This document shows positions 22,191 through 63,926 of a DNA stretch of 64,000 bases, in pieces. This stretch comes from Octopus bimaculoides. Its lineage: Eukaryota. The position numbers and the translations under genes were made by a program. Position 1 is the first letter of the stretch. Each line of letters begins with the position of its first letter. The notes beneath the pieces are model-generated. The model had not been told where the DNA came from. It searched no databases and saw only the letters and a program-made list of their open reading frames with translations. The stretch is taken from contig NC_069005.1 of assembly GCF_001194135.2 (NCBI RefSeq), positions 22,565,699 through 22,629,698 on the forward strand. The letters are read 5' to 3'.

Positions 22191-23154
22191 TGGTGTGCGT
22201 GTACATACACAAAGTACAGAGAGAGAGAGAGAATTATAGAAGAGTAGATATAGGAAGAGGAGGAAATAAATCTAAGGAGTAGAAGATAAAAGCTTTACAG
22301 CTTTATAACAAATGATTTCACCTTAAGCAGATGGATTAAAGCATCAAAGCTGACATGTCATAATTAGCACTAAAGCCACTGTTCAGCAACACATCTTTTA
22401 TATCACCAATGCACTTCCTCACATGAATATTACAATGACATTTTTATTTTCACCTTGTTTCGTAAAGTCCTCCAGTTATTTGTTTAACCACAGGACATTC
22501 CTGTTCCAACAAACTTATGATTAAAGACATTCATGCCATCACCATCCAGTTTTTTTAAATGGTAGGGTGCAGTTTGAGAGAGATATGGTTGCTATTTTTA
22601 ACAGGTCAAATGACCATACAGAGGATTCTTTATAAAACAAGATCATAAAACAACCAGTTTTTGTGAGATGTTAATACTAGATATTTGTAAATCAGGATAT
22701 TTCATGACTAAGATCACACAGCCAAGAAAACATCGGGTCTTTATATCCCCAGGCATTAACCTTGCTCTGTTAAAAATACCTCCAGTCTGAGTGAGATGTA
22801 AACACCAAGTATTTTATAAATCATGTCCTTCAGAGAAAAGGTCACAGCCTAGAAAACTTTACTACTAACTATTGATCTCAAGTTAGTACAGTAAAGGGCA
22901 AGAGGCGTCTGATAGCGGAAATTGGTAGTGTCACAAGGATGGGAAGAATTGAGAAAATCCGAGAGCAATGTTCAGGGGAGGGAGGAAAGAGAATAGCAGA
23001 AAATGTTTTGTGATTTTAGTCTTTAGTTATTAAGTATCAGGATATTGACAGTAATTCAACTGTCATCCTTCTCTGATGTAAAACTTCACTCTGAGTCACG
23101 GTCAGCTGAAACCAAGATAGTCGTTTCTCATTTGGTGATGCAATATCTATGTTT

Positions 23155-23372
23155 TAAATTTTGGTACAGGGCCAGTGAGTTTGTGGGAGGGGGCAAGTTG
23201 ATTACATTGACCGCAGTGTCCAGCGGACACTTATTTTATCAACCCTGAAGTGATGAAAGGCAAAGTTGACCTTGGTGGAATTTGAACTCAGAATATGAAG
23301 ACAGACAAAATGCCGCTAAGGCATTTTGCCCAACATGCTAACTATTCCACCAGCTCAACACCTTAGATGCAT
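23155..23372 (-). mobile_element. SINE-B
   Basis: ggtacagggcc...gaaaggcaaagttgaccttggtggaatttgaactcagaa...ccagctcaacacc. Confidence 0.85.
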
Positions 23373-41640: not shown

Positions 41641-42339
41641 GTATGTACTTGTGCCTCTCTCCGAAAGAGAGAGAGAGAGGGGGGAAAATATTTTTGTCCC
41701 CTACTCTACTGATTCTGCCAACCAAAAGTCCAAAGTGGTTTAACATTTGAAATATGTAATTGGAAATTTGTCTCTTTGGGAGAGCTTTTGTGGACAATAA
41801 ATAGTACAGATAATACATTTCCAAAAGTATTTTCTCAGTCTTCTCATTTCTTAAAAATAAATGAGCGTGTGATTAAGAAATTCACTTGAAAATTATGTGG
41901 TTCCATGTTTGACTTCACTAAGCACCACTTTGAGCAAGTGATTTTCTTCTATCTTAGCCTCAGGTGGACAAATGCCTTGAATAGAATTTCCTTTCACACG
42001 CACATATGAGTGAATGCATATGGATATTTTACTATTGTATAAGAGTGAAAGATGTAAATGTTATTAAGAAAAACCAATAATGTGGTGCTTTCGAATAGAT
42101 ACACCTTGTATGGTATGTCTGCCCGAGTTGTACAGACACTCTCTTGCCACTCTTTAACCAGTGATTGGCCTATCAAACACCTGTAACCAACAACATTATT
42201 CTTTAGAGCTAGGAGATATTTAACAGCTACCCTCCCCATGACAATTATTCACACCTTACAAAAGCCCATATGAGGCCCACAATAGATTATTGCTCCCACA
42301 TCTAACACAATACTGCTACTACCCACACACAAAGACATC

Positions 42340-42660
42340 CTAGATTACATTCAGAAAAGGGTCACCCAAGTGACTGGCATAAAGTCACTCACAGATATGC
42401 TCCAGCTTCTCACCTCACAGGTGCACTTTCAACTCTTTTTTGCCTTTTCCACCATCATTTATATTATAAGGGCCTTCACACCTCAGAAATGGCTTGGTTC
42501 ACAATCACTTTCATTTAGGTATTCCTGACTCACTTGCCTCCTCCTTTTATCATCCTTGTTGTGTCCAACCCTACAAGCACCTGCACTAATCACTACATGT
42601 AGCCATTCCCTCCCAGAACATCAACTCTCTGGAATTCCATCTCAGCTCATGTCTTACCTC
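42340..42660 (+). mobile_element. Degraded CR1/L2/Jockey-type LINE, reverse transcriptase C-terminal fragment
   Basis: Frame reads TNHYM*PFPPRTSTLWNSISAHVLP, matching the RTxxxxxSFFPRTxxLWNxLP C-terminal pattern. Confidence 0.5.
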
Positions 42661-42689
42661 TATATGGTTACTATTGTTTTGAATACACA

Positions 42690-43929
42690 TCGCCATACGT
42701 TTACACCACTCATTTTTTTAATTTGTTATTTTTTTCATTTTCAGATACCCAAAAGATGCCATTGACAAAAGAACAATGAACTGAGATCATATTGATGGCC
42801 ATGTCTGGAAGTAGTCGCAAGATTGCAGCAGAATTTAATAGAAAACATGGAACCAACATAACACACGATACCGTTGCAAAACTTATGTTAAAGTTTAAAA
42901 AAACTGGATCTGTTAAAGATCAAAGAAGAAGTGGTAGACCACATACAGCAATCGATGAAAACACAACAGTTAGAGTTTTTGCATCAATAACATGGAGCCC
43001 CTGTAGAAGTACACGAAGGCATCTGGAAATGTCTGATCCAACCACTGATGCACTTGAATAACATAATGAGGTGGGGCTCCATCTTGCGGGAAGTAAACCA
43101 GAAAGTTACCGTTTAACAGTGATGGGAAAATTTCTTGCAACATGTTGAGATACTTTTTGGCATTAAGATTTCCATTAACAAAAATTGGGCCAATGACTTT
43201 TGTCACCCCATATCCCAACCCAAGCCATCACTTTATCAGCACCTTGCATCTTTGTTGCAATCATCCAGTGAGAGTTAGCATTGCTCCAATAACGCATGTT
43301 TTGGCTATTAACCTCTCCATTGACGTAAAAGTTAGCTTTGTCAGTAAACAAGATCTTAGTTGAAAAGTTTGCGTCATCATTCAATTTACTTGATGCCCAT
43401 TCACAAAATTCCAGTTGTCTATCTGGGTCATCTTCACTTATATGCTGCAGCGTCTGCGGTTTGTACGGATGCCACTTATTTGATTTTAAAATGCGTGTGA
43501 TACTCTGTTTACTGACTCCAATTTCAGCAGCACGGAATCATGATATTGCCAGAAAGATGGCAAAAGGTCATCGAACAAAATGGAAAACATATAATATTGG
43601 TAGGCATGGTCCAATTGAGTGGCCTCCTCAATCTCCTGATCTTACCCCTCTTGATTTCTATCTTTGGGGGCATTTGAAAGGCATGGTGTATCACGAAAAG
43701 ATAAAAGATATAAATCATTTGAAGGAACGCATTACGAAATCATTTGCACAAGTATCACCAGATGTGCTATTATGAGTTCACAATGAATGGGGTAAACGTA
43801 TAGCAATGTGTATTCAAAACAATGGTGACCATATAGAGCCGGTTAAATAAAAAAAACTGTTCTTATAAGCTGTTTCTTATTAAAAAAATAAACTGTTTCT
43901 ATGTATGGTGACTTTAGAATCACCGTGTA
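42690..43929 (+). mobile_element. DD41D (rosa-type) Tc1/mariner transposon with internal inversion
   Basis: Plus strand N-terminus MPLTKEQ*TEII...KFKKTGSVKDQRRSGRP...SPCRSTRR (42756-43020). Minus strand middle ...ILFTDKANFYVNGEVNSQN...QDGAPPHY...LDQTFPD (43533 to 43021). Plus strand C-terminus IGRHGPIEWPPQSPDLTPLDFYLWG...GDHIEPVK* (43596-43850). Restored D-to-D spacing is ~41. 3' TIR ...ttagaatcaccgtg|TA; 5' TIR not found. Confidence 0.9.
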
Positions 43930-43945
43930 TATATATGTATGTGTA

Positions 43946-43997
<52 letters not shown>

Positions 43998-44511
43998 GAT
44001 AATAAAAATTAGTCAATACTACATGTTTTCTTTTTGTTTAGGTTAAAGTAACATAGGTCTAAAACAGATTATATAAACTAAAACAATAGATTCCATCAAT
44101 TTTGTGACCTTGTCACCATATCTCCTAATGCTTTCTGCCAGTTGTTCCCAACCTTTTGTAGCACAAAGCCCCTTTCATTGAATGCTGTTTTACAAAGGCC
44201 CTTCTACCTCATCCACCCTTTACGTCTTTTGAAAAAAAAGTAACAGCAATTATTTAAGCAAACAGAAGTTAATTTTACACAGTAGTTTATTATCACTCTA
44301 TCCTTATTTTCCCTTCTATCATGTACCACTGTTTAGACACTTGTTAAATTTTCAAGGAAATTACAAAAGGAGGCAAAGGCTTATATCATGAAATTACATT
44401 GGACCTTGGTGCATTATCGTAAGTTCTGTGTCTACTCACTGATAAACACAATACCCTACTCATATTTTCATCCAGACAAAATATTAACATGCATATTATA
44501 CAAGGTTTTGA

Positions 44512-44730
44512 TATTTTTGGCAAACTGGTAGAATCGTTAGCACACCAAGCAAAATGCTTAACAGTATTGCACTAGTCTTTACGTTCTGAGTTCAAATTCT
44601 GCCAAAGTCAACTTTACCTTTCATCCTTTAGGGGTTGATAAAATAAGTACCAGTTGAGGACTGGGTTGATGTTATCAACTTATCCCCTCCCACAAACTTA
44701 CCTGCATTGCACCAAAATTTGAAACCAATA
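44512..44730 (+). mobile_element. SINE-B
   Basis: ggcaaactggtagaatcgttagc...gttctgagttcaaattctgcc...aaaatttgaaaccaatat. Confidence 0.85.
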
Positions 44731-45280
44731 TTTTTTGTCTAAGAAAATACATGGCTCCTCTAAGCACCCTGTATCTCTATAGTACCTTCTTGACTTTTGC
44801 AACTGACTTATAAAACTCATGATGCCTCTAAGTAGAGGCTACTGCCCAGATCAATTACCAATGCCTTACGGTATGTGACATCCTTACTGGTATTTTTGTC
44901 ATTTGTGTTATTTAAATTTAAACCCTCACAACACCCTTAACACATAAAATCCTCAACCACAATTAAGTAATTGTTGGCAAATCCTGATTCACATGTAATC
45001 GCAATTCAAATAATGTTGTTTGGGGCTAAAAAACAGGAACTAAGAAACAAAGTTTAGCTTTATTTCAGAAAGAACTTCCTGTCAGAAGACTTCCTGTTTA
45101 CATTATGTTCAAGCATCATGACAGTTAGAATTTGGTGATATTATTTATTGATGATTTATTCATTATTATCAAAATATTAATGCAATTGAACCTTCCTTCC
45201 TGCCTTTTGTGTCATGCTCCAGAAATATTATTCAAGTGAAAAATCTTTTTACTCACAAAATATATACATATATATACACG

Positions 45281-45350
<70 letters not shown>

Positions 45351-45360
45351 NNNNNNNNNN

Positions 45361-45915
45361 GTAATTTCAGTTTTTTAGTGTGAAATAAAAGTCGTTTTTT
45401 TTTTTTTTCATACAAAGAATGAATGTTAATCAATTATATGCTTTCCATTTTGTTCGATGACCTTTTGCCATCTTTCTGGCAACGTCATGATTCCTTGCTC
45501 ATAGAACTTCTGGTCCTTATCAGCCAAAAACTGAAACAAGTGCAATTTCAGGTCATCATCATTATTGTCAGTTTTACCATTCAAAGAATTTTGCAAACTT
45601 TGAAATAAATGGTAATCTGATGCTGCAAGGTCAGGGCTATATGGTGGATGTGACATCACTTCCAACCAAGTTCCAATAATTTTTCACAAATTAGCAAAGA
45701 CATGTGTGGTCTAGTGTTGTCATGATGGAACATGATGACTTTACAGTTTGCTGATTCTGGACGTTTTTCTTTGATTGCTTCCTCCAGTTTCATTAGTTGT
45801 TGACAGTAAACATCTGAATTGACCATTTGGTTCCTTGGAAGCAACTTAAAACACACAACATTTTTGTAATCCCACCAAATTGACAACAGGACCTTTTTTT
45901 GATGCAATTCAACTG
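45361..45915 (-). mobile_element. D,D34D mariner transposase, C-terminal half (decayed)
   Basis: LLSIWWDYKNVV...FHHDNTRPH...LELGW / EVMSHPPYSPDLAASDYHLFQSLQNSL...LPERWQKVIEQNGKHIID; TIR remnant gtaatttcagtttt beside a gap. Confidence 0.92.
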
Positions 45916-46419
45916 GTCTGAACATAAAACAAGTAGAATATTCAGGCCAGATATGACTGGTTTAAATGCTAATGGTGATATTTCATACATAAGATAGCAT
46001 GAAATTTTGATGGAAGATTTTAATTTTGATAATTTTAAAACATAGACTCACAGGCAGTCTCAGTCATGTTGGTATCAGAAAGTTAGTTAATGGGAAAAAT
46101 TCACCGAGTTGTTTTTTTTTTCATATGTGTATTTTAATTTAAAAGATAGTTATTGGAGAAGAAAATACATACTGAGCCTATTTAACCAACAGGCCTCATA
46201 TGCTAAAAGAAATATATTTTTTTGGAAGGAATGGTATTAAATAAGTAAGTCATTGTGTAGTAATATTCACTTGTGAAAGCCATGGAATTGCTAGTTTATT
46301 AATGAGAAAATCACAGAAATATTCCACTGTCATCTGTGCACACCTGAATACTGGCCAACATTGCTCATCGATTTAAGGCAATACAGAATAATTTAGATTA
46401 TAAATATAACAAATCTTTA

Positions 46420-62107: not shown

Positions 62108-62673
62108 TAATAATAATCCTTTCAACTAAAGACACAAGGCCTGTAATTTGGTGGGCGGGGAATAGCACTGAAATGGAACTTATCTTATCAACTTTGAAAG
62201 GATGAAAAGCAAAGTCAATTTTGGCAAAATTTGAGCTCAGAATATGAAGGCAGATGAAATGCCAGCATTTTGCCTGTCATACTAACAGGTCTACCAGCTC
62301 ACCACCTTAATGATAATAATAATAATCCTTTCTACTATAGGCACAAGGCCTAGAATTTGGGGGGAAGGGTTAAGGCAATTACATCAACCCCAGTACTCAA
62401 CTAGTACTTAATTTATCAACCCCGAAAGGACAAGAGGCAAAGTCGACCTCAGCTGAACTTGAACTCAGTACCTAAGTGATCAGCAAAATACCGCTAAGCA
62501 TTTTGCCCGGCATGCTAATGATTCTACCAGTTTGACTAGTACTTAATTTATCAACCCTGAAAGGATTGAAAGGCAAAGTCAACCTCAGTGGAATTTGAAC
62601 TCAGAATGTAGCAGCAGATGGAATACCACTAAGCATTTCGCCCAGGATGCTAACAATTTTGCTAGCTCACCAC

Positions 62674-63693: not shown

Positions 63694-63926
63694 TATTTCT
63701 TTACTACCCACAAGGGGCTACACACATAGGGGACAAACAAAGACAGACAAACGGATTAAGTCGATTATATCGACCCCAGTGCGTAACTTGTACTTATTTA
63801 ATCGACCCCGAAAGGATGAAAGGCAAAGTCGACCTCGGCGGAATTTGAACTCAGAACGTAGCGGCAGACGAAATACCGCCAAGCATTTCGCCTGGTATGC
63901 TAACGATTCTGCCAGCTCGCCGCCTT
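63694..63926 (-). mobile_element. Youngest SINE-B, with 15-bp TSD and an alternative 3' tail
   Basis: CpG-rich ggcggcgagctggcagaatcgttagc...gaggtcgactttgcctttcatcctttcggggtcg; TSD tggcttgtatagtgt at 63679-63693 and 63933-63947. Confidence 0.95.

What the first reader, a model, noticed from the sequence alone, without database searches (positions are those of the whole stretch)
42756..43850. DD41D transposon with an inverted core and a 62-bp patch matching a neighbouring mariner
Seen: the transposase reads plus (42756-43020), minus (43021-43533), then plus (43596-43850), and re-inverting the middle restores a continuous STRR-(R)AAEIG...FPD-(W)IGRHGP protein. The right breakpoint holds 43534-43595, which matches the reverse complement of the D,D34D mariner 3' end at ~45433-45494 (62 nt, 3 mismatches, two of them cg vs ta), ~1.9 kb away. 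Near-microhomology agca(c/a)gg sits at the junction. Established: templated insertions at inversion breakpoints mark MMBIR/FoSTeS or polymerase-theta end joining. Inference: one repair event switched templates between two unrelated transposons.
Basis: partly seen in the sequence, partly recalled or inferred. Interest (0 to 1): 0.75.

Follow-up and report, generated by a model that had tools for sequence, protein, structure and literature searches.

The report
Inverted dead transposon with mariner filler
A dead Visitor (DD41D) transposon copy had its middle 513 bp flipped in place, and one breakpoint was patched with about 62 bp copied from a mariner transposon; this is a real, old and neutral DNA-repair scar of a known kind, and the reads disagree about the inside of the patch.

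Summary
Segments A (42727-43020, +), B (43021-43533, -) and C (43596-43927, +), once B is re-inverted, are colinear with intact 348-aa DD41D/Visitor transposases and with an intact element. Nothing is lost at A/B and 5-6 nt are lost at B/C. The patch 43534-43595 matches the reverse complement of 45433-45494 with 3 mismatches.

It is neither a misassembled inversion nor a dispersed chimera. The A|B junction sits in single-copy contigs in every whole-genome run checked. The A|B and B|patch junctions also leave traces in a sister taxon.

- The patch is as far from the mariner family consensus (3 differences) as from the neighbour (3). It does share two rare states with the neighbour. One to three other copies match its last 36 nt perfectly.
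- In six whole-genome runs the B-side contig leaves the window sequence inside the patch (43546-43580) and continues into sequence absent from the window. One other run supports the window version. The insert may therefore be longer or polymorphic.
- A single event cannot be shown.

Interest is low.

The parts
42658..42714 (-). Inverted 57-nt copy of the Visitor 3' coding end (NEW.KR.AMCIQNN..HIE). It sits where the left TIR and 5' UTR should be.
   Evidence: 89.5% identical to the reverse complement of 43782-43838. It also matches L001 2235-2203 on the minus strand. The flank through this piece into segment A is contiguous in a 1215-nt single-copy contig (X5).
42727..43020 (+). Segment A: remnant of the 5' UTR (42727-42765) and codons 1-85 (ATG at 42766; ends ..STRR). 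There is one in-frame stop (Q8*).
   Evidence: The left TIR and about 100 nt of the element's 5' end are absent.
43021..43533 (-). Segment B: the inverted core, codons about 86-256 (RAAEIG...DQTFPD), holding the first two catalytic D residues. It carries one frameshift (WGDK|VIGP).
   Evidence: The A|B junction is spanned by a 283-nt contig (42906-43188, 0 differences) at single-copy depth in X1, X2, X3, X6 and X9. The junction words are held by 19 runs.
43529..43535 (.). Imperfect microhomology AGCA(C/A)GG shared by the B end and the mariner sequence.
   Evidence: the 67-nt match includes 43529-43533 with one mismatch.
43534..43595 (+). Mariner-derived filler (reads IMILPERWQKVIEQNGKHII). It corresponds to the last 20 codons of a D,D34D mariner ORF and stops just before the stop codon.
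   Evidence: Reads from other mariner copies leave the window at 43595 with TGATTAAAGTTCATTC.... B|patch is verified through 43545 in six whole-genome runs and through 43574 in X13. Patch|C is verified by exact 60-63-nt contigs in X1, X6 and X9.
43596..43927 (+). Segment C: codons about 259-348 (IGRHGP...HIEPVK*, stop at 43848-43850, one in-frame stop), the 3' UTR and the right TIR (43893-43927, ...GGTGACTTTAGAATCACCGTG), followed by TA.
   Evidence: The TIR is 88% identical to the right TIR of relative L002 and occurs only once in the window.
45361..45911 (-). Neighbouring 5'-truncated D,D34D mariner copy. The candidate template is 45433-45499. Its 3' end runs into the N gap at 45351-45360.
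   Evidence: Pfam Transposase_1, E = 2e-19. D34D spacing was counted from the ORFs. Family reads leave the copy at 45911.

Best explanation
A dead, 5'-truncated copy of a Visitor (DD41D) Tc1/mariner transposon carries the scar of an old germline complex rearrangement.

- Its central 513 bp were inverted in place.
- The left junction is a clean join with about 2-3 nt of microhomology.
- The right junction lost 5-6 nt and gained filler copied from the last 62-67 nt of a D,D34D mariner ORF.
- The filler lies in the opposite orientation to the truncated mariner copy 1.84 kb downstream. That copy, or one of its very few near-identical relatives, is the most likely template.

The mechanism is inferred, not shown: template-switching DNA synthesis during break repair or replication (MMBIR/FoSTeS-like, or synthesis-dependent alternative end joining), with the nascent strand priming on short or imperfect homology.

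The scar has no function. It is fixed in organism A and predates the split from sister taxon 'organism B'.
For: - Colinearity after re-inversion with intact proteins and an intact element, with loss of only 5-6 nt. This makes a true inversion far more likely than two independent copies.
- A|B junction: an exact 283-nt contig at single-copy depth (for example 10.6 against 11.4, and 56.7 against 51.7) in five runs. Junction words are held by 19 runs from at least 10 samples, and one of the two words by an organism B run.
- B|patch junction: one single-copy contig in six runs, exact through 43545, so it includes the private T43544/A43545. An organism B contig covers 43295-43563.
- Patch|C junction: exact 60-63-nt single-copy contigs and 9 runs holding the words.
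- The filler is an internal mariner fragment with no TIR, so it did not arrive by transposition.
- Link to the neighbour: both carry C at 43588, where 217/248 family reads have T. Both carry a pyrimidine at 43544, where 390/405 family reads have A.
- The local ACG against the patch ATA is a CpG site. All three differences between patch and neighbour are transitions.
- Microhomology of 2-5 bp and multiple switches are the stated MM-BIR signature (PMC7407515).
Against: - Raw distance does not favour the neighbour: there are 3 differences to it and 3 to the family consensus.
- The exact 36-mer 43560-43595 has 2.3-3.6 times single-copy depth. So 1-3 other copies carry A43587/C43588, where the neighbour has G43587.
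- The patch|C junction has no microhomology.
- In six whole-genome runs the B-side contig differs from the window at 4 positions within 43546-43580. It then runs into CTAATGAAAAAAAATTACTATTCGCACAAA, which is absent from the window.
- Those runs hold only 1 of 2 sampled words of 43516-43575. The ancestral insert may therefore be longer or multi-part, and the 62-bp form secondary.
- X2 and X5 lack the patch|C junction.
- A 62-nt insert copied from 1.8 kb away is larger and more distant than typical polymerase-theta inserts (my own knowledge).
- A single event cannot be demonstrated.
Confidence: 0.55

Rival explanations
1. The history had several steps, or the insert is longer. B and C were originally separated by a longer or multi-part insert: a mariner-like piece M1 attached to B, other sequence, then a mariner piece M2 attached to C. 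The window's 62-bp patch would then be a secondary deletion or recombinant between M1 and M2, either a real allele or an assembly collapse.
For: - Six whole-genome runs (X1, X2, X3, X5, X6, X9) have a full-depth contig that equals the window only to 43545. It has 4 mismatches by 43580 and then 62-186 nt unlike the window.
- X1, X3, X6 and X9 also hold the patch|C junction, at full depth.
- Whole-genome runs hold only 1 of 2 words of 43516-43575.
- The patch|C words are missing in X5 and are not found in X2 or X8.
Against: - X13 has an exact 370-nt contig over 43206-43574 and holds both words. The window version therefore exists in at least one independent data set.
- The organism B contig follows the window to 43563.
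- The sequence of the alternative contig beyond 30 nt could not be read. Its similarity to the mariner 3' UTR is not significant.
Confidence: 0.35
2. The filler came from a distant mariner copy or from a free mariner DNA or cDNA fragment captured by end joining at the break, not from the neighbour.
For: - About 200 family copies exist (reads at about 200 times single-copy coverage).
- The patch is no closer to the neighbour than to the consensus.
- One to three other copies match its last 36 nt exactly.
- The patch|C junction is blunt.
Against: Two rare states are shared with the copy only 1.84 kb away (C43588; pyrimidine at 43544). Fewer than about 6-11% and about 2.5-4% of family reads carry such states. 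The chance that the nearest copy has both is roughly 1% or less.
Confidence: 0.2
3. There was no inversion. Two Visitor copies inserted in opposite orientations, nested or adjacent, and were then trimmed by deletions.
For: The family is multi-copy. At least one intact-junction paralogue exists (X1 contig with TTTCCAGATACCTGG|ATTGG), and so does an abundant MITE (miniature, internally deleted) derivative.
Against: A ends exactly where B begins, and B ends 5-6 nt before C begins, in the coordinates of an intact element. There is no overlap or duplication. Independent copies would not be complementary to the nucleotide.
Confidence: 0.03
4. The inverted arrangement is an assembly artefact.
For: The window has an N gap at 45351-45360, and the interior of the patch is not reproduced by most whole-genome runs.
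Against: All three junctions occur in contigs from independent runs and studies, at single-copy depth.
Confidence: 0.03

Closest known systems
MMBIR / FoSTeS complex rearrangements (microhomology-mediated break-induced replication; fork stalling and template switching)
   Same: An inverted segment, a templated insertion from nearby sequence in inverted orientation, and junction microhomology of a few nucleotides. There may be more than two switches if the 57-nt inverted piece belongs to the same event (PMC7407515).
   Different: The scale is very small (0.5 kb inside one 1.2-kb element). One junction is blunt. A single event is not shown. This is a fixed germline scar in an invertebrate-type genome, not a disease or cancer allele.
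Polymerase-theta-mediated end joining / synthesis-dependent MMEJ with templated insertions
   Same: Filler copied from another DNA stretch after priming on short or imperfect homology. Germline scars of this kind, including after transposon breaks, are described (PMC7407515).
   Different: The filler is 62-67 nt long and its candidate template is 1.84 kb away. Typical inserts are shorter and copied from the immediate flanks (my own knowledge, not tested here).
Visitor (VS) / DD41D family of Tc1/mariner transposons
   Same: The transposase, once re-inverted, has the DD41D spacing of its intact relatives, an N-terminal HTH region, a TIR of the form CA(G/C)GGTG..., and a flanking TA (family name from PMC8472432 and bioRxiv 10.1101/2022.10.13.512200).
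   Different: This copy is dead: its core is inverted, its left TIR is missing, and it has two stops and one frameshift.
Filler DNA / capture of transposon fragments at double-strand breaks by end joining
   Same: An internal fragment of a repeat, without its ends, sits at a repair junction.
   Different: Two rare variants shared with the adjacent copy point to copying in cis rather than capture of a random fragment.

Membership tests
Tc1/mariner DD41D (Visitor/VS) | Catalytic triad D..D..D with 41 residues between the second and third D | tested here: met
   Intact relatives P0001-P0003 have 41 residues (QDG...PLD). The window copy has 39 plus the 2 residues (AW) lost at the B/C breakpoint.
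Tc1/mariner DD41D (Visitor/VS) | Full-length colinear similarity to family transposases (HTH + DDE) | tested here: met
   65-68% identity over 99-100% of the length to 348-aa proteins. Pfam gives only sub-threshold HTH_32, HTH_Tnp_Tc3_2 and DDE_3 matches.
Tc1/mariner DD41D (Visitor/VS) | Two terminal inverted repeats flanked by a TA duplication | tested here: not met
   The right TIR 43893-43927 followed by TA is present and resembles the TIR of L002. No left TIR is found anywhere in the window. The copy is truncated, so it is a remnant and not a complete element.
Tc1/mariner DD41D (Visitor/VS) | Placement in the VS clade in a phylogeny with reference DD41D, DD39D, DD37D and DD34D transposases | not tested
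   No reference set of named family members was at hand.
mariner D,D34D (the neighbour and the patch) | Pfam Transposase_1 domain and 34 residues between the second and third D | tested here: met
   PF01359, E = 2.2e-19. HHD-34-D(YHLF) was counted across the ORFs. Relatives end ..GIMKLPERWQKVIEQNGKYIID.
MMBIR/FoSTeS-type rearrangement | Microhomology (about 2-5 bp) at the breakpoint junctions | tested here: inconclusive
   A|B has 2-3 nt (GC or GGC), inferred from relatives' sequence. B|patch has 1 nt exact inside a 6-of-7 match. Patch|C has 0 nt.
MMBIR/FoSTeS-type rearrangement | Inserted segment templated from nearby sequence | tested here: inconclusive
   62/67-nt match to a copy 1.84 kb away, with two shared rare states. 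However, the distance to the family consensus is equal, and 1-3 other copies match the 3' 36 nt better.
MMBIR/FoSTeS-type rearrangement | All junctions created in one event | not testable with these tools
   This needs orthologous loci in outgroups. A|B and B|patch both leave traces in organism B, which is consistent with one event but does not prove it.
Polymerase-theta end joining | Short templated insert copied from the immediate flanks of the break | tested here: not met
   The insert is at least 62 nt. No matching sequence lies in the immediate flanks, and the nearest is 1.84 kb away.

The most novel reading that the evidence does not exclude
A single germline replication-repair event made four or more template switches within about 3 kb. 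It stitched together an inverted piece of the element's own 3' end (42658-42714), the 5' part, the inverted core and a piece of the neighbouring mariner. It may have been triggered by a transposase-induced break in the Visitor copy. It was then fixed and retained in two species, with later secondary change inside the filler. This would be a miniature, naturally fixed chromoanasynthesis-like scar.
Probability: 0.15. Interest if true: 0.4.

Novelty: new member of a known kind. Interest (0 to 1): 0.2.

Why it matters
This is a clean, base-resolved natural example of an inversion with templated filler inside a datable, neutral sequence. The dead transposon's original order is known from intact relatives, so the breakpoints, losses and microhomologies can be read directly. 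Scars like this could be used to survey which error-prone repair pathways act in the germline of this lineage. On its own it has no functional consequence and illustrates a known class of rearrangement. The practical lesson is about assembly and polymorphism: the interior of the filler is not the same in all data sets.

Tried and rejected
1. Misassembly of the inversion: rejected, because junction contigs occur at single-copy depth in many runs.

2. Dispersed chimeric family: rejected. A and B have about 1-8x read depth even at 80% likeness, and the junction contigs are single-copy.

3. The match 42658-42714 / 43782-43838 as the element's TIRs: rejected. Intact relatives have about 35-nt TIRs of the form CAGGGTG... 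outside the ORF. The true right TIR is 43893-43927. No left TIR exists in the window.

4. Patch plus C as one composite repeat: rejected. The stretch 43596-43630 is low-copy, and mariner reads leave the window at 43595.

5. Looking for contigs that encode the chimeric ORFs across B-patch-C: nothing on record.

6. Locating the extension of the alternative contig in the window: no match. Its likeness to the mariner 3' UTR is not significant, with 83 of 500 shuffles scoring as well.

7. Enumerating mariner copies through the protein database: this only confirmed the K...Y consensus and gave no census of this genome.

8. Raw reads: the three 2026 runs give only about 0.4-0.9x each and are linker-containing libraries, which is too thin to span B-patch-C.

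Full report
**What is in the sequence**

Translation of the region shows a Tc1/mariner-type transposase in three pieces:
- plus strand to 43020 (..SPCRSTRR);
- minus strand over 43533-43021 (RAAEIGVS...DQTFPD);
- plus strand from 43596 (IGRHGPIEWPP...HIEPVK*).

Joined in the order A + reverse-complement(B) + C, the 343-aa product aligns over 99-100% of its length, at 65-68% identity, to intact 348-aa proteins from other organisms. In those relatives 41 residues separate the second and third catalytic D. The window copy has 39 plus two residues ('AW') missing exactly at the B/C boundary. This is a DD41D element, the family called Visitor/VS (PMC8472432; bioRxiv 10.1101/2022.10.13.512200).

It gives three blocks, + / - / +:
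- 42727-42972 = 1170-1417;
- 43019-43530 = 1988-1469;
- 43596-43859 = 1993-2256.

A global alignment of the re-inverted element is colinear from the 5' UTR to the right terminal inverted repeat (TIR). No gap falls at A/B and 5-6 nt are missing at B/C. Two independent copies in opposite orientation would not be complementary to the nucleotide, so this is a real in-place inversion of about 513 bp.

The copy is dead: it has two in-frame stops and one frameshift.

**The patch**

The stretch 43534-43595 equals the reverse complement of 45433-45494 with 3 mismatches, at 43544, 43545 and 43587. BLAST extends the match to 67 nt (43529-43595, 94%, E = 1e-23 within the window).

The source type is the last 20 codons of a D,D34D mariner ORF (Pfam Transposase_1, E = 2e-19). 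The patch stops just before the stop codon. It has no mariner terminus, so it did not arrive by transposition. The neighbouring mariner (45361-45911, minus strand) is itself 5'-truncated, and its 3' end runs into an N gap.

**Junctions**

- A|B (43020/43021): a clean join. The bases GC (perhaps GGC) could come from either side, judging from the relatives' native sequence.
- B|patch: AGCA(C/A)GG is shared, which is 6 of 7 bases, with only 1 nt exact at the join.
- Patch|C: blunt, with 5-6 nt of the element lost. A conspecific intact paralogue reads TTTCCAGATACCTGG|ATTGG.

**Is it real, and is it single-copy?**

- A|B junction. A 283-nt assembled contig (42906-43188, no differences) spans it at single-copy depth in X1, X2, X3, X6 and X9, and a 162-nt contig does so in X5. 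Words across the junction are held by 19 runs from at least 10 samples and 5 studies. One of the two words is held by an organism B run.
- B|patch junction. It lies in one single-copy contig in six whole-genome runs, exact through 43545, so it includes the patch's private T43544 and A43545. An organism B contig covers 43295-43563, with all 8 of its differences inside B.
- Patch|C junction. It lies in exact 60-63-nt single-copy contigs in X1, X6 and X9, and in a 127-nt contig in X3. Nine runs hold its words.

The inversion is therefore not an assembly error. The chimera is not a dispersed family, and it is old, about 3% divergence from organism B.

**An unresolved discrepancy inside the patch**

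No contig spans B-patch-C, because 43546-43586 is identical to high-copy mariner words.

In all six whole-genome runs examined, the B-side contig (177 nt; 301 nt in X5) has full single-copy depth. It carries 4 mismatches to the window somewhere within 43546-43580. It then continues as CTAATGAAAAAAAATTACTATTCGCACAAA, which is not in the window.

The whole-genome runs listed in the word test hold at most one of the two sampled words of 43516-43575. Run X13, labelled 'RNA?', holds both, and it has an exact 370-nt contig over 43206-43574.

X1, X3, X6 and X9 carry both the divergent B-side contig and the exact patch|C contig, the latter at full depth. X2 and X5 lack the patch|C junction.

The simplest readings are these:
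- Most individuals have a longer or multi-part insert (M1 ... M2), and the window's 62-bp form is a deletion or recombinant between two mariner-like pieces.
- Alternatively, a later insertion or variation arose within the patch.

The raw reads available cover the locus only about 0.4-0.9x per run.

**Where did the filler come from?**

Reads from about 200 family copies give the family states. Protein relatives likewise end ..GIMKLPERWQKVIEQNGKYIID.

| Site | Family | Patch | Neighbour |
|---|---|---|---|
| 43544 | A (390/405 reads) | T | C |
| 43545 | G (350/405) | A | G |
| 43587 | A (251/264) | A | G |
| 43588 | T (217/248 and 234/264) | C | C |

The exact 36-mer 43560-43595 has 2.3-3.6 times single-copy depth. 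So 1-3 other copies carry A43587/C43588 and then continue as canonical mariner sequence.

In favour of the neighbour, it shares the rare C43588 and a rare pyrimidine at 43544. The local ACG is a CpG site whose decay gives T. The chance that the nearest of about 200 copies has both rare states is about 1% or less.

I therefore rate cis-templating from the 45.4-kb copy, or from a very close relative, as likely but not proven.

- The element lacks its first 100 nt or so, including the left TIR. The motif CACGGTGATTCTAAAGTCACC occurs only at the right end, 43907-43927.
- Where the missing end should be sits a 57-nt inverted copy of the element's own 3' coding end: 42658-42714 against 43782-43838, 89.5% identical. 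It is contiguous with both the flank and segment A in a single-copy contig.
- This may be one more template switch of the same event, or a fragment of the abundant derivative described next. The substitution pattern is star-like and does not decide between them.

**Mechanism and comparison with known systems**

The features are an inversion, inverted-orientation templated filler from nearby, short or imperfect microhomologies, and perhaps several switches. They fit MM-BIR/FoSTeS-type template switching, which uses 2-5 bp microhomologies and multiple switches (PMC7407515).

Synthesis-dependent alternative end joining is the main alternative. The insert length and the 1.84-kb template distance are atypical for polymerase theta (my own knowledge).

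The mechanism is inferred from the scar; nothing here shows it directly. Whether all junctions arose at once cannot be tested with the data at hand.

**Verdict**

This is a new instance of a known kind of rearrangement, in a dead transposon and without functional consequence. Interest is low (0.2). The one open point worth a follow-up is the true structure of the filler in different individuals.

Noticed in passing
window 43631-43927: The 3' 300 nt or so of the Visitor element is an abundant repeat in its own right, about 100-200x read depth per run against 1-8x for segments A and B. Reads show that its left flank is ...TTATAAGA(A/G)ACAGTTTATAAGATCCCCT(A)G joined near 43631. This is a subterminal 5' sequence resembling the reverse complement of 43862-43885. 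It looks like a MITE (miniature, internally deleted) derivative of the family.
   Followed up: partly
window 42658-42714 and 42640-42726: An inverted 57-nt copy of the element's own 3' coding end occupies the place of the missing left TIR and 5' UTR. It may be a further breakpoint of the same rearrangement.
   Followed up: partly
window 43546-43580 (reads): Six whole-genome runs carry a single-copy contig that equals the window from 43466 to 43545. It then has 4 mismatches and continues as CTAATGAAAAAAAATTACTATTCGCACAAA, which is not in the window. Only run X13 reproduces the window here.
   Followed up: partly
window 43596-43629 (reads): The patch|C junction words are present in 9 runs. They are absent from X5 and not found in X2 or X8. 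X2, at about 50x, has no contig over 43600-43629. The locus seems structurally polymorphic.
   Followed up: partly
elsewhere in the genome (X1 97-nt contig fitting 43596-43660): At least one paralogous Visitor copy has an intact B/C junction (..TTTCCAGATACCTGG|ATTGG..). It differs at 5 of 65 nt, including 43629A and 43630G. It shares 43599-43628 with the window copy and so confuses short-read contigs.
   Followed up: no
window 44519-44735 and at least 10 other places (e.g. 63757-63921, 62354-62534, 30321-30536, 23151-23353): A roughly 180-200-nt dispersed repeat that looks like a tRNA-derived SINE (my reading of the sequence; no tRNA or RNA-family search was run). It has many copies in the window at 72-80% identity and an enormous contig word depth (about 3e5 against about 22 for single-copy).
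   Followed up: no
window 45351-45360: A 10-N assembly gap lies between a long (CA)n tract and the 3' terminus of the neighbouring mariner copy, so that copy's end and its flank are not resolved.
   Followed up: no
window 45911-46045: The mariner copy is cut off at about 45911, where family reads continue GCTTTCGATGTGG.... It abuts other high-copy repeats, at 300-1300x read depth per run over 45911-46035.
   Followed up: no
window 42300-44000 (runs X13, X14, X20, X36): Small runs labelled 'RNA?' hold words and contigs of this transposon remnant, for example a 370-nt contig over 43206-43574. The region may be transcribed, for instance as part of an intron, or those libraries may contain DNA.
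   Followed up: no
window 43455-43495: A short stretch inside segment B has about 6 times single-copy contig depth at 96% likeness or more. Some other repeat shares about 40 nt with the element here, and this is why contigs break at 43466-43488.
   Followed up: no
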